From assembly GCA_002269645.1 (NCBI GenBank), contig NIVC01000143.1, positions 434,001 to 498,000 on the forward strand: a stretch of 64,000 nt of DNA, written 5' to 3'. Both the position numbers and the translations under genes were made by a program. A model generated the notes under the pieces. It made no database searches and was not told where the DNA came from. It worked only from the letters and a program-made list of their open reading frames with translations. This document shows positions 45,312-53,184 of the stretch, one piece after another; the first letter of the stretch is position 1, and each line of letters opens with the position of its first letter. The DNA is from Macrostomum lignano. Taxonomy: Eukaryota.

Positions 45312-48300
45312 CTAGGCCAAACCGTGCACCCTGAACCGATACAGACAGGTGTACATCTCGTTGCCATGGTTACTCTCAACTACCAGCTCCACGTATTCCC
45401 AGTAGCGCTCAGTGGTCGCATTGAGATGAAACGTCTGCGAAGCGGGTCCCGTGTCGGCGTTGTAGACAAAGGAACCCAAAATCACAGCTTCGGTGAAAGC
45501 TGTGTAGGAGGACTCCAGGCCATAGACAGAGAAGTTCCGCGGCGCGCTGCTCATGGAGGCATTGTAGGACACCTCCCTGGCGGCGTGGTCGATGGTCACC
45601 GAGCTGACTCTGGCGGGCACGGCCAGGCGGACTATGAGATGTCCGGGGAAGCCCTGCGGACAGAGAGATTGAAGCGAGTTTGTTTTTTAAAAATACACTT
45701 AATTATAAATAGCCGATAAAGATCTGTCTGATAGAAAAAATTGTTTATAAACTGTGTGAGACAGACAGACACTGAGACAGACACTGAGACAGACACTGAG
45801 GCAGACACTGAGGCAGACACTGGGCAGACACTGAGACAGACACTAGGAGGGGCACTGACACAGACACGGACACAGACACTAAGAAAGACACTGAGACAGA
45901 CACTAAGACAGACACTGAGGCAGACACTGAGGCAGACACTGGGCAGACACTGAGACAGACACTGAGACAGACACTGAGACAGACACTGAGACAGACACTG
46001 GGACACACACTGAGACAGACACTGAGACAGACACTGAGACAGACACTGAGACAGACACTAGGAGGGGCACTGACACAGACACTGACACAGACACTAAGAC
46101 AGACACTGAGGCAGACACTGAGGCAGACACTGGGCAGACACTGAGACAGACAGAGACAGACACTGAGACAGACACTGAGACAGACACTAGGACAGACACT
46201 GGGCAGACACTGAGGCAGACACTGAGACAGACACTGAGGCAGACACTGAGACAGTCACTGAGACAGACACTGAGACAGACACCGAGACAGGGACTGAGAC
46301 AGTCACTGAGACAGACACTGGGACAGACACTGAGACAGACACTGAGACAGTCACTGAGACAGACACTAAGACAGACACTAAGACAGACACTGAGACAGAC
46401 ACTGAGACAGTCACTAAGACAGACACTGAGACAGACACTGAGACACACACTGAGACAGACACTGAGACTGACACTGTGAGAGACACCGAGACAGTCACTA
46501 AGACAGACACTGAGACAGACACTGAGACAGCCACTAAGTCGGACACAAGGACAGACACTGACACACAGTCAGACAAGTTTTGATTTGTCAGAAACTCTGC
46601 AACAGCCCGTAGTCAGCGCACCTGGAAGGCCCAGCACTCGCCCAGATTGGTGTCGGGCTCCAATGCTGTAGTTGGCGACCGTGAGAAGGCCAACACAGGG
46701 AAGCCGAACAGTTCCACAACGGAGGCCTGGCCGTTATAGGCCACTGTGCACCGGGTGCCAACCACGTAGGCGCCAGCGCTGTGCAGAGCAAAGTCCGGCA
46801 CTAAGTTTGGAAATGGATCATCAGCTTTGAAGTCGCGAATGCTGCAGTTGCAGCTGCTAGAGGCCAGTCGTTCAACGGCGACAAGTCGCCTGCGGTACTC
46901 CGCCAGCTGACGATGCAGCCGAACTGCTTCGGTGACGTTACCAGCTGGATAAGTCTCGTTTACGGTGTCATTGCAGCTGCTACCAGGCACTGGTGGAGAA
47001 TCTTTCAGCTTACCTAGCTGCTCCTCTATGTTATTTACCTGCCTCTGTAGTGCAGCAATAGTCTGTCTGCGACCTTCGTCTTCACCAGCAATAGATGCTG
47101 CAGAAGATTCAACAGCGGATAGGCGTTGTTTATTATCGCTTTCAGTCTGTTGCAGAAACACCAGCTGCTGCTGATAGTTCTTTAACTGCTGTTGTAGTTC
47201 GACTGTTAGCTTTTGCTGTTCGCCTAAACCGTTCTCCTGTGCAGCAGAGAAGGATGCATCTACAGCACTTATCCGTTCGGATACGTTTGAAACAAAAATC
47301 TGATGCTTAGCATCTAAATTTCTCTGATACTCTTCAAGCTGCTGCTTCAAATCTTCTGCTTTTACTTGTTTAGTGACCGTCTTCAAGCTGGACTCGAGCT
47401 CATCAAGACGCTTTGTCACTGTTGAAGCAAGTTTGCGTTGTTCAACTTCTGCTTCTTTGAGGACAGCCAGCTGCTGCTGGTAAGTGCTGAACTGGTCCTG
47501 CAATTCCACTGTTAACTTGGACTGCTCTGATGCATCCTGCGACTTGCTAGAAGTCAACAATGTCACGGTTGATTCAACAGTTGCAAGACGCTCCGACACG
47601 GATGTTGCAAGTTTACGCAGTTCAGCTTCAGCCTCTTTAAGCTTTACGAAATCTTCAACTAAACTTTCCTTATCTGCTCCTAACGAGGTTAATGACGATT
47701 CCAATGCAAATAATCGATCAGAAACATTAGCATTCACACTCTGCTGCTCCGTACTAAACTGTTTTAATAGCAATAACTGCTCTTGATAACCGGACAGTTG
47801 CTGCTCGAAAGTTTTAGCTAGTTTGGAACGCTCAGCTGAGTTGTGCTCATTTGACAAAGTGGATGCAGTCTCAAGAGCACTTAGACGTTCAGAGACGGCC
47901 AAGGAAAGTTTTCGCTGCTCCGCTTCTGCGTCTTTAAGCAACGCCAACTGCAGCTGATAGGCATTGAGTTGTTTTTCCAGATCGGATTTCTGCTTCGCTT
48001 GTTCCTTAACCTCAGCTTCTTTCGACAGCGCATTTGCCGAGACAGCAGCTTCCAGAGCAGTCAACTGTTCCGACAATTTTGCAACAAACTTTTGCTTTTC
48101 AGACTCCCTGTCCTGCAATAGCTTCAACCGATCTTCATAACTACTCAATTGATTTTTTAATTCTGCAATCAGTTCTTTTCGCATTTCGTCATTATCAAAT
48201 TGCTTAACCAAAGTTACAGCCGACTTAGCCTCTGCAGAAGCATTTTCAGAAAGCTTCTCATTTGCATCGAGCCGCTCAGAGATAGCGCCTATTTGAAGTT

Positions 48301-51300: not shown

Positions 51301-53184
51301 TTGTTGTTGTTGTTGCTGTTCTAACAGTTGACGTGGTAGTCCTACTACTCAAACCAGAATTGTAAGCGTAGTCTGGTTGGTACCGAGCACCTTCATAGTA
51401 TTGCCTGCTCAGAGTGGCCTCAACCGTGCCTCTGTCTCCCTGGTGATCCTCATCGTCACTGCCATCATCATCATATTCATGAGCAGCATCTCCCGCTGTC
51501 AACGTATCGCCGTCGGCAGTTCGCAGCTTGAATCGGACAGATCGTCGACCACCAGAAGATGTCGACTTCAACGAAGCAACGCCGTGCAGCCGACAATCGA
51601 CGTGGCCGCAGTGGACGCCGCCTTCGGCCCGGCAGCGCGATCTGAGCACACGATCCGACTCGCTGCTGCCGTGCAGCGACAGAGTTGACGCTGAAAATCT
51701 TCGACGCTCACGGATGCCAATGCCGCTGCTGCCGACGCTGCCGCTGGCAGTCGAGGCCGACGAGGAGCCAACGATGCTAACGGGGCTGACTGGAGCAACT
51801 GCAATGTGGCGTTTGCGGGAATAAATTTATACTTCAAAATGCTTTGCAAGTTTGCATATGTAGTGCAGTGAATCAGGAATTAGGGCGTTAATTAGAGGCG
51901 CCAAACCTGGATTAAAAGGGCGCCGAAACTGAATTAAGGGGCGCCGAATCTGGATTAAGGGGCGCCGAATCTGGATTAAGAGGTGCTGAATCTGGATTAA
52001 GAGGCCACCGAACCTGGATTAAGAGACCACCGAATCTGGATTAAGAGGCCACCGAACCAGGAGTAAGGGGCGCTGAATCTGGATTAAGGGGCGCCGAATC
52101 TGGATTAAGAGATGCTGAATCTCGATTAAGAGGCCACCGAACCAGGAGTAAGGGGCGCTGAATCTGGATTAAGAGGCCACCAAATCTGGATTAAGAGATG
52201 CTGAATCTCGATTAAGAGGCCACCGAACCTGGATTAAGAGACCACCGAATCTGGATTAAGAGGCCACCGAACCAGGATTAAGGGGTGCTGAATCTGGATT
52301 AAGAGGCCAACGAACCTGGATTAAGAGGTGCTGAATCTGGATTAAGAGGCCACCGAACCTGGATTAAGAGACCACCGAATCTGGATTAAGAGGCCACCGA
52401 ACCAGGATTAAGGGGTGCTGAATCTGGATTAAGAGGCCACCGAACCTGGATTAAGAGACCACCGAATCTGGATTAAGAGGCCACCGAACCTGGATTAAAA
52501 GACCACCGAATCTGGATTAAGACACTTAATCCAAATTTTCGGATTTTCAAAATGACAATTCACAATCCAAACAAATTAAAAGTCAAAAACACGGATGACT
52601 TACTGTTGAAAGGACTGGGCGAGCCAGCAAAACAGCCAGCCGTGTTGCCAGGTGGGCTGTGCAAAGGTGATCGACTCAAATTCGGACTGCGCCAATTACG
52701 GTGCAGCAACTCGGTCTGATAGCTGCCGCTGTAAAGTAGTATATTAAGCAATCATAATCATCATTATTATTATTTATTAAACTACACTTTTAGCATAACA
52801 ACAACAACACTATACTACTTAGCAGTAACCTTACCTGTAAGCGTAGGTGTAATTAGATTTGGGCGATCTGGAAAAATAAATGTTAATATTAAATACATAA
52901 ATGATCTAAAAACCATATACTACTACTAATTAGCTGTAGTAAGTAGTAAAAAACAACTCACACTTCGTGATAAAGTCTGTGATCGTTTGGGTTTAAGTAG
53001 GAAAATGTCTCATTCAGCGATGACAGCTCCTCGAATCTATAAAAAAACACAAGTTGTTGCATCAATATTAGAGCTTATTTTGCCTTTATACTACTTTTTC
53101 GGGCTTGAAATAAGTAGTTAAAACAGCTTAAATGAATTTCCAGACTTACGCTGAGGAGCCGTCAGGTGAACCGAAGGCTGACAT
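45312..53184 (-). CDS. Giant SUN-domain inner nuclear membrane protein (SUN1-like LINC component, ~1,928 aa)
   Basis: Exons 53184-53150, 53036-52962, 52867-52835, 52728-52604, 51798-46622, 45653-45312, all GT-AG and phase-compatible (5,787 nt). N-terminal NYTYAYSGSY/SPNLSRSPL resembles the SUN1 N-terminal motif. One TM segment, a long coiled coil, then a SUN domain (PDFALHSAGA, PDTNLGECWAFQG, VTIDH, SSAPRNFSVYG, SNHGNEMYTCLYRFRVHG). Confidence 0.93.
45755..46560. repeat. 12-nt minisatellite (cactgagacaga) filling the last SUN intron
   Basis: Tandem units within intron 45654-46621. Confidence 0.95.
51895..52522. repeat. 21-23-nt minisatellite (gaatctggattaagaggccacc) filling SUN intron 4
   Basis: Tandem units within intron 51799-52603. 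Confidence 0.95.

What the first reader, a model, noticed from the sequence alone, without database searches (positions are those of the whole stretch)
45312..53184. Giant SUN protein with a ~1,390-residue luminal stalk of about 20 repeats
Seen: between the TM (~50945-51035) and the SUN domain, one 5.2-kb exon encodes about 20 diverged units of consensus QQLxxYQxQLxxLKxAExEQxKLxxxVSERLxALE separated by short S/G-rich linkers. Established: SUN1/2-type proteins are roughly 700-900 aa and span a 30-50 nm perinuclear space. Inference: at ~0.15 nm per residue this stalk could reach 150-200 nm if extended, implying a widened nuclear envelope lumen, a folded or segmented spring-like LINC tether, or links to a more distant membrane.
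Basis: partly seen in the sequence, partly recalled or inferred. Interest (0 to 1): 0.75.

Follow-up and report, generated by a model that had tools for sequence, protein, structure and literature searches.

The report
Giant-stalked SUN nuclear-envelope protein, flatworm
This is a real gene of the flatworm Macrostomum lignano for a nuclear-envelope bridging (SUN) protein; the part lying between the two nuclear membranes is about four times the usual length and is built from some 22 repeated coiled-coil modules, which makes it a natural test of whether such proteins set the spacing of the nuclear envelope.

Summary
On the minus strand, six exons (53184-45312) encode a 1,928-aa type-II membrane protein. 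It has a nucleoplasmic N-terminus, a TM at residues 344-373, a 1,384-aa luminal stalk and a canonical C-terminal SUN domain (Pfam 4e-33; human SUN2 structures 1e-42, with the KASH-lid and cysteines conserved).

The stalk holds 21-22 diverged units of about 57 aa (mean identity 28%). A profile built from the C-terminal units alone finds 10 N-terminal units at 19-43 bits, against at most 7.4 bits in shuffles. Each unit is a continuous stretch of about six heptads. Seventeen units carry the R-hxxhE motif for parallel trimers in the right register (0.4 expected by chance).

The window is Macrostomum lignano. Two GenBank loci carry the same six-exon model (PAA66908.1, PAA92837.1, "hypothetical protein"), taken from RNA-seq assemblies, so exon 5 is kept in the mRNA. 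Across the three copies the stalk has no indels and dN/dS of 0.44-0.68.

Among 116 close SUN relatives the median stalk is 316 aa and the longest is 850 aa (a sea cucumber). Other flatworm SUNs have about 360-430 aa. No other protein on record has this repeat, and I found no paper describing it.

The contour length of about 150-205 nm is sound arithmetic. Any effect on nuclear-envelope spacing is untested. I call it a new variant of a known kind.

The parts
53150..53184 (-). Exon 1 (start codon at 53184-53182)
   Evidence: Identical to L001 and L002. The GenBank model PAA66908.1 starts 9 nt upstream, as 'VWF-M'.
52962..53036 (-). Exon 2
   Evidence: ag|..|gtgagt borders; the frame is restored. 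100% identical in L001 and L002.
52835..52867 (-). Exon 3
52604..52728 (-). Exon 4
46622..51798 (-). Exon 5, 5,177 nt. It encodes most of the nucleoplasmic domain, the TM, the whole stalk and the first third of the SUN domain.
   Evidence: Uninterrupted ORF. 97.3% nt identity to L001 and L002 with no frame-breaking differences.
45312..45653 (-). Exon 6: the C-terminal two thirds of the SUN domain plus the stop codon (45312-45314)
51563..51658 (-). Nucleoplasmic Cys/His motif SDRvLRSrCRaeGGvHCGHVdC (residues 137-168)
   Evidence: 56% identical to the same motif in the M. lignano paralogue P0020, E 4e-9.
50948..51037 (-). Transmembrane segment (residues 344-373), preceded by RNVQRK and followed in the lumen by a GCC pair
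   Evidence: Sequence and hydropathy.
46997..50731 (-). Array of 21-22 coiled-coil units of about 57 aa (residues 446-1690)
   Evidence: Hydrophobic periodicity at 3.5 residues, z=13. 16 of the 17 R-hxxhE motifs lie here. AF2 gives one helix per unit.
46862..46927 (-). Neck helix before the SUN domain (residues 1714-1735), containing R-LVAV-E and followed by CxC
46622..46795 (-). SUN domain, N-terminal part (residues 1758-1815; KASH-lid, Cys1773, Cys1811)
   Evidence: Nearly gapless alignment (one 2-aa and one 1-aa gap) to human SUN2 structures 4FI9 and 4DXT, E ~1e-42.
45763..46565 (-). Minisatellite filling intron 5 (12-mer AGACAGACACTG, about 67 copies); not coding
   Evidence: It explains the spurious repeat ORFs.
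51907..52522 (-). Minisatellite in intron 4 (22/43/87-bp unit)

Best explanation
This is an expressed, lineage-specific paralogue of the SUN1/2-type inner-nuclear-membrane protein of Macrostomum lignano. Its topology is that of a canonical LINC-complex SUN protein: N-terminus in the nucleoplasm, one TM, C-terminus in the perinuclear lumen, and a KASH-binding SUN domain at the very end. Its luminal stalk grew to 1,384 aa by an old tandem amplification of a module of about 57 aa. Each module is about six heptads of parallel three-stranded coiled coil carrying its own R-hxxhE trimerisation motif, followed by a short polar Ser/Thr-rich linker. The protein would therefore form a trimer whose stalk is a chain of about 22 short trimeric rods, with a contour length of about 150-205 nm, roughly four times the usual 30-50 nm lumen. 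Shown here: the gene structure, the repeats, the heptad register, the motif enrichment, SUN-domain conservation, transcript-based models, purifying selection and rarity. Inferred: trimer formation, and that at rest the stalk is slack, tilted or folded in the lumen. On that reading it acts as a long, compliant tether that keeps the SUN-KASH link intact when the two membranes are pulled apart or deformed, rather than as a rigid ruler.
For: Gene and domains. Repeats real and specific. Coiled coil: the a/d pattern is continuous over columns 11-53 of the unit and the 3.5-residue periodicity has z=13. Trimer signal: 17 exact R-[ILVM]xx[ILVM]-E motifs against 0.39±0.63 in shuffles, maximum 3. They sit with R at g, h at a, h at d and E at e, as the motif is defined for parallel three-stranded coiled coils (PMC3653964). 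AF2 with an in-register alignment gives one helix of 48-55 residues per unit, with low-confidence breaks at the linkers. Expression: identical six-exon GenBank models at two loci, built from RNA-seq assemblies. Constraint: the frame is intact over 5.2 kb in three copies, with no stalk indels; dN/dS is 0.44-0.68 in the stalk and 0-0.11 in the SUN domain. Against a ruler role: shortening UNC-84 does not change envelope spacing.
Against: No localisation, oligomer-state or expression-pattern data exist for this protein. [quoted passage not shown] Most linkers lack Pro and Gly; Pro occurs only at 743-755, 1223-1234 and 1691-1694. Single-sequence AF2 ran one helix straight through a linker, so the stalk may be stiffer than a 22-joint chain. 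The stalk's dN/dS is only moderately below 1. The compliant-tether function is inferred, not tested.
Confidence: 0.55

Rival explanations
1. Compact, self-packed stalk. Neighbouring helices fold back on each other into antiparallel bundles, as the CC2 three-helix bundle of SUN2 locks its SUN domain. The stalk would then be far shorter than its contour length and would mainly regulate or autoinhibit KASH binding, or store length that unfolds under force.
For: The single-sequence AF2 model of four units has two long helices with pTM 0.51, and its nearest PDB folds are antiparallel helical hairpins such as SMC arms and chemoreceptors. A lumen of 30-50 nm cannot hold a straight 200-nm rod at right angles to the membranes.
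Against: A monomer prediction of a trimer-forming sequence folds back by default. No Foldseek match reached E<=0.001. With the in-register alignment the pTM is 0.32, with no confident packing between helices. The 17 in-register R-hxxhE motifs point to parallel trimers.
Confidence: 0.2
2. True long ruler or distant-membrane link. In the expressing cells the protein spans a strongly widened perinuclear or ER lumen (100-200 nm), or reaches a membrane other than the closely apposed outer nuclear membrane.
For: The contour length is 150-205 nm. The stalk length is exactly conserved in three gene copies. The molecular-ruler idea exists in the field.
Against: Deleting about 300 aa of the UNC-84 linker left envelope spacing unchanged. 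My literature searches found no paper linking Macrostomum to SUN, KASH or LINC proteins, and none of the listed hits reports a dilated nuclear envelope in Macrostomum. The three copies differ by only dS 0.02-0.06, so the lack of indels is weak evidence.
Confidence: 0.1
3. Annotation artefact or decaying gene. Exon 5 contains unrecognised introns, or the gene is a pseudogene with no function.
For: No full-length cDNA or protein evidence was seen here directly. The GenBank entries are flagged 'partial' and 'hypothetical'.
Against: An open frame of 1,725 codons is kept in three diverged copies, with dN/dS below 1 and a strongly constrained SUN domain. The models come from transcripts. 'Partial' is explained by the missing upstream stop in the transcript: the 'VWF' is the 9 nt before the ATG.
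Confidence: 0.05
4. A SUN-domain protein used away from the general nuclear envelope. Examples would be a germline- or spermatid-specific structure (as mammalian SUN3-5 are testis-specific) or an ER-sheet spacer analogous to CLIMP-63.
For: M. lignano keeps a conventional paralogue (P0020, 1,003 aa, stalk of about 360 aa) that could serve the housekeeping role. Divergent SUN paralogues in other animals are germline-restricted.
Against: The known germline SUNs have shorter, not longer, luminal domains. No expression data were found in three supplement searches.
Confidence: 0.1

Closest known systems
Mammalian SUN1/SUN2, C. elegans UNC-84 and Drosophila Klaroid (C-terminal SUN proteins of the LINC complex)
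   Same: Type-II topology and a luminal coiled-coil stalk. The terminal SUN domain aligns nearly gaplessly (two small gaps) to human SUN2 (about 46% identity by my own count of the printed alignment; E 1e-42), with the KASH-lid, the KASH-disulfide Cys and the Cys pair conserved.
   Different: The stalk is 1,384 aa against about 300-450 aa (median 316 in 116 relatives). It is built from about 22 recognisable tandem modules, each with an R-hxxhE motif. No such repeat was found in about 165 other SUN proteins or in 1.84 billion representative proteins.
M. lignano paralogues P0020 (PAA65290.1, 1,003 aa) and P0001 (606 aa)
   Same: They are the closest SUN domains (57% identity). They share the nucleoplasmic Cys/His motif, a GCC pair just after the TM and an R-LNRL-E motif in the neck.
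   Different: Their stalk is about 360 aa or less, with no repeat array.
Holothuria leucospilota 'SUN domain-containing protein 1' (KAJ8037644.1, 1,363 aa)
   Same: A long, coiled-coil-rich luminal stalk of about 850 aa, the next longest in the sample.
   Different: It is 40% shorter. The Macrostomum unit profile scores at most 2.7 bits on it, and it has a single R-hxxhE motif.
Short parallel trimeric coiled coils with the R-hxxhE motif (coronin-1, GCN4p-M3, the cortexillin variant)
   Same: The same motif in the same heptad register.
   Different: Those are single short coiled coils. Here about 17 copies are strung in series inside a membrane-protein stalk. Trimer formation was not measured here.
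CLIMP-63 (luminal coiled-coil spacer of ER sheets)
   Same: Works alike only in concept: a type-II membrane protein whose luminal coiled coil relates to lumen width (mentioned in PMC4615189).
   Different: No sequence relationship was detected. This protein ends in a SUN domain.

Membership tests
C-terminal SUN-domain (LINC complex) proteins | Sad1/UNC-84 domain at the extreme C-terminus | tested here: met
   Pfam PF07738 at residues 1795-1926 of 1,928, E 4.4e-33. PDB SUN2 and SUN1 chains, E 1e-42 to 3e-40.
C-terminal SUN-domain (LINC complex) proteins | Type-II topology: one membrane-spanning segment with the SUN domain on the luminal side | tested here: met
   A single strong hydrophobic segment at 344-373, with basic residues on its N-side. 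Residues 265-300 form a weaker hydrophobic stretch, as in SUN1/2. This is prediction only.
C-terminal SUN-domain (LINC complex) proteins | KASH-binding elements: KASH-lid hairpin, the Cys that bonds KASH Cys-23, and the structural Cys pair | tested here: met
   Ungapped alignment through the lid (NGQASVVELFGFPVLAFSRSP), with TRC (C1773), ECW (C1811) and YTC (C1918) all aligned to SUN2. Which residue plays which role comes from my own knowledge of the SUN2 structures.
C-terminal SUN-domain (LINC complex) proteins | Trimerising coiled coil directly before the SUN domain | tested here: inconclusive
   The neck helix at 1714-1735 carries R-LVAV-E, and heptads are present throughout. The oligomer state was not measured.
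C-terminal SUN-domain (LINC complex) proteins | Inner-nuclear-membrane localisation and a KASH partner | not testable with these tools
   No localisation data. The M. lignano proteome was not searched for KASH proteins.
R-hxxhE parallel trimeric coiled coils | Arg(g)-h(a)-x-x-h(d)-Glu(e) in the heptad register | tested here: met
   17 exact motifs against 0.39 expected. The register comes from the unit alignment, columns 45-50. The definition is from PMC3653964.
Spectrin-repeat rods (as in nesprins) | Three-helix-bundle repeats of about 106 aa, recognised by Pfam spectrin models | tested here: not met
   Pfam finds only Sad1_UNC at E<=0.01. The units are about 57 aa and each is predicted as one helix.

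The most novel reading that the evidence does not exclude
The giant SUN is a natural 'long ruler'. In the cells that express it, the trimeric stalk stands extended and defines, or spans, a perinuclear or ER-continuous lumen several times wider than the canonical 30-50 nm, or ties the inner nuclear membrane to a distant membrane. Changing the number of units would then change the spacing.
Probability: 0.1. Interest if true: 0.85.

Novelty: new variant of a known kind. Interest (0 to 1): 0.55.

Why it matters
Whether SUN stalk length sets nuclear-envelope spacing has so far been tested by shortening a stalk (UNC-84, PMC4615189). This gene is the opposite case, supplied by nature: a stalk about four times the usual length, made of countable modules. 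Its host animal is transparent and transgenesis methods exist for it (PMC5730564, PMC7053086). Units could be deleted or added and the envelope geometry and nuclear mechanics read out directly. The stalk is also an unusually regular series of predicted trimerisation modules, which is of interest for coiled-coil design and for models of force transmission through LINC complexes.

Tried and rejected
The organism was identified through the exhaustive HMMER search instead.

2. The word-indexed search with the C-terminal 361 aa missed the near-identical GenBank protein. That index is incomplete, so its negative results count for little.

3. P0019, a 2,451-aa pigeon 'protein' with 24 matched stretches, looked like a second giant. 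It is a gene-model artefact made of tandem SUN C-terminal fragments.

4. P0163 (1,878 aa) and P0153 (1,604 aa) are long because of their N-terminal, multi-hydrophobic regions, not their stalks.

5. A first pseudo-alignment of overlapping three-unit windows came out staggered rather than in register (A1). It was discarded in favour of non-overlapping windows (A2).

6. Foldseek on the monomer model returned only generic helical hairpins, none at E<=0.001. A PDB sequence search with 401 aa of stalk found nothing.

7. No higher-order repeat structure was found. Identity does not depend on the distance between units; the C-terminal units are simply better conserved.

8. Searches for the gene IDs in main texts and in three papers' supplements found no expression data.

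9. Spectrin-repeat and CLIMP-63 membership were considered and rejected.
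Full report
**1. What is in the sequence**

The minus strand between 53184 and 45312 carries a six-exon gene. All six exons have canonical ag|..|gt borders:
- 53184-53150
- 53036-52962
- 52867-52835
- 52728-52604
- 51798-46622 (5,177 nt)
- 45653-45312

The spliced CDS is 5,787 nt and encodes 1,928 aa.

Pfam finds one domain, Sad1/UNC-like C-terminal (PF07738), at residues 1795-1926 with E 4.4e-33. Against the PDB, the last 170 residues align almost without gaps (one 2-aa and one 1-aa gap) to human SUN2 and SUN1 SUN domains, at E 1e-42 to 3e-40. 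The alignment covers the KASH-lid hairpin and the three cysteines (TRC, ECW, YTC).

The only strong hydrophobic segment is residues 344-373 (window 50948-51037). Basic residues lie on its N-side, which gives the type-II topology of SUN proteins. The luminal stalk from the TM to the start of the SUN domain is 1,384 aa. The last intron splits the SUN domain. Introns 4 and 5 are filled by minisatellites. These produce the spurious repeat "ORFs" listed.

**2. The repeats are real**

A regular-expression anchor on the S-E-R-L-x-A-L-E motif found 17 units. A profile built from those 17 finds 21-22 units between residues 446 and 1690. Successive units start 48-89 aa apart, mostly 50-62 aa. Mean pairwise identity is 28% (range 12-49%).

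To avoid circularity, I built a second profile from the seven C-terminal units only. It finds ten units in the N-terminal half at 19-43 bits. The controls score far lower:
- at most 7.4 bits in 200 composition-matched shuffles
- at most 5.7 bits in about 165 other SUN proteins

There is no tandem repeat at the DNA level inside exon 5. Unit similarity does not fall off with distance along the array. The amplification is therefore old.

**3. What a unit looks like**

Hydrophobic residues in the unit alignment fall at columns 11, 14, 18, 21, 25, 28, (32), (35), 39, 42, 46, 49 and 53. This is an unbroken 3-4 heptad pattern over about 43 residues. Local Fourier power of hydrophobicity at a period of 3.5 residues is 13 standard deviations above shuffles.

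The most conserved part of the unit, R-L-x-A-[LIV]-E, is an exact instance of the coiled-coil trimerisation motif Arg(g)-h(a)-x-x-h(d)-Glu(e). [quoted passage not shown] The stalk contains 17 exact matches, against 0.39±0.63 in 5,000 shuffles with a maximum of 3. The 17th lies in the neck helix just before the SUN domain. This fits the known trimeric state of SUN domains. [quoted passage not shown]

AlphaFold2 was run on three units with an in-register alignment of other unit triplets. It gives one helix per unit (54, 55 and 48 residues), with 5-residue breaks and pLDDT dips at the linkers, and pTM 0.32. A single-sequence run on four units instead gives two long helices, one of which runs through a linker. 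Its PDB neighbours are generic antiparallel hairpins, none of them significant.

The linkers are 4-23 aa and rich in Ser, Thr, Ala and polar residues. Gly makes up only 2.2% of the array. Pro occurs only at residues 743-755, 1223-1234 and 1691-1694. How flexible the joints are is therefore open. The Pro sites would divide the array into three stretches of roughly 44, 69 and 68 nm; this is inference.

The contour length is 205 nm if the stalk is fully helical. The coiled-coil cores alone account for about 147 nm. Cysteines sit at both ends of the stalk: GCC after the TM and CxC before the SUN domain. They could staple the trimer; this too is inference.

**4. Organism, expression and constraint**

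An exhaustive HMMER search of 1.84 billion representative proteins found one full-length match, P0018, at 2,358 bits. P0018 is GenBank PAA66908.1, [quoted passage not shown]. A second copy, PAA92837.1, is also on record.

Both loci (L001 and L002, assembly GCA_002269645.1) show the same gene order as the window: an LRR gene, then the SUN gene, then a CD36-family gene. Compared with both loci, the window's exons 1-4 are 100% identical and exon 5 is 97.3% identical; flanking DNA is roughly 82-97% identical. The window is thus a third copy or allele in this neopolyploid species.

My six-exon model equals the GenBank model exactly. The only difference is three extra residues, "VWF", which are the 9 nt upstream of the ATG. 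The GenBank annotation of this assembly was derived from RNA-seq transcript assemblies (StringTie/TACO plus a de novo transcriptome) with TransDecoder ORFs (PMC5730564). The assembled mRNA therefore retains the whole 5.2-kb exon.

Among the three copies the stalk has no indels, stops or frameshifts. Stalk dN/dS is 0.44-0.68, against 0-0.11 for the SUN domain. As an example, 45 synonymous and 72 non-synonymous differences were counted in the window-versus-L002 comparison. By my own rough estimate, not a tool result, only about 22% of differences would be synonymous under neutrality. So the stalk is under weak but real purifying selection.

**5. How unusual it is**

For the 150 best SUN-domain relatives I measured the distance from the last hydrophobic segment to the start of the SUN domain. 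In the 116 where a TM was found, the figures are:
- median 316 aa
- 90th percentile 437 aa
- maximum 850 aa

The maximum belongs to Holothuria leucospilota SUN1, which does have a long coiled-coil-rich lumen. The TM finder is crude, and the sample covers only the closest relatives.

Within flatworms the stalks are ordinary. The M. lignano paralogue P0020 has about 360 aa, and a Dicrocoelium protein has about 433 aa. The paralogues have the closest SUN domains (57% identity). They also share a nucleoplasmic Cys/His motif with the giant, so the giant arose by duplication within the flatworm lineage.

A search with the stalk alone in the 5.8-billion-protein collection returned only P0018. No paper mentions this gene, and none links Macrostomum to SUN, KASH or LINC.

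**6. Interpretation**

Well supported: this is a bona fide C-terminal SUN protein, present in RNA-seq-derived transcript models, with a modular and probably trimeric luminal stalk about four times the usual length.

Not settled: what the extra length does. The "molecular ruler" idea predicts a wide lumen. However, removing about 300 aa from the UNC-84 linker left nuclear-envelope spacing unchanged (PMC4615189). Spacing therefore does not simply follow SUN length.

My preferred reading is a slack, compliant tether that stays engaged during large membrane separations or nuclear deformation. Three rivals remain open:
- a compact, self-packed stalk
- a true long ruler
- a cell-type-specific use away from the general nuclear envelope

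An annotation artefact is unlikely.

**7. Verdict**

This is a new variant of a known kind. The sequence is already deposited in GenBank but has not been described.

Noticed in passing
window 9749-14215 (-) and 27305-31504 (-): Two very long single ORFs (1,488 and 1,399 aa), both rich in ankyrin repeats and about 17 kb apart on the same strand. They look like tandem paralogues.
   Followed up: partly
window 39531-42336 (-) and 59820-60503 (-): The neighbours of the SUN gene are a CD36-family gene downstream and an LRR (LRR_6, TMOD/LMOD-type) gene upstream. The same order is found at both GenBank M. lignano loci, L001 and L002.
   Followed up: yes
window 4719-5483 (+): An ORF matching the C-terminal domain of glycoside hydrolase family 63 (mannosyl-oligosaccharide glucosidase), E 3e-84. 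It is probably one exon of a larger gene.
   Followed up: partly
window 44424-45212, 42433-43378, 54000-58500, 36200-38650: Many minisatellite arrays surround the gene. The 33-bp period at 45000-45212 comes from TRF; periods of roughly 23, 28, 36 and 41 bp are read from BLAST offset ladders. Array lengths differ between the window and L001/L002. These arrays create long spurious ORFs on both strands.
   Followed up: partly
L001 and L002 versus window 45312-53184: The window is a third, distinct copy of the locus. Coding identity is 97-100%, flanks are roughly 82-97% identical, and protein identity is 95.5-96.0% to the two GenBank copies, which are 97.6% identical to each other. This fits the duplicated, neopolyploid M. 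lignano genome.
   Followed up: partly
P0019 (KAK2517653.1, Columba guinea, 2,451 aa): A pigeon 'hypothetical protein' made of more than 20 tandem copies of a SUN-domain C-terminal fragment plus a short coiled coil. It looks like a gene model drawn across a tandemly duplicated exon block, not a real giant SUN.
   Followed up: partly
window 53185-53235 (-): An in-frame ATG lies 17 codons upstream of the annotated start, and a possible acceptor (tttcag|CTATC) lies 25 nt upstream. The true 5' end or a trans-splice site was not determined.
   Followed up: no
window 51289-51320 (-), residues ~244-255: A threonine run (TTTTTTTT, encoded by ACA repeats) in the nucleoplasmic domain. It is the only length difference (2 aa) among the three gene copies.
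   Followed up: yes
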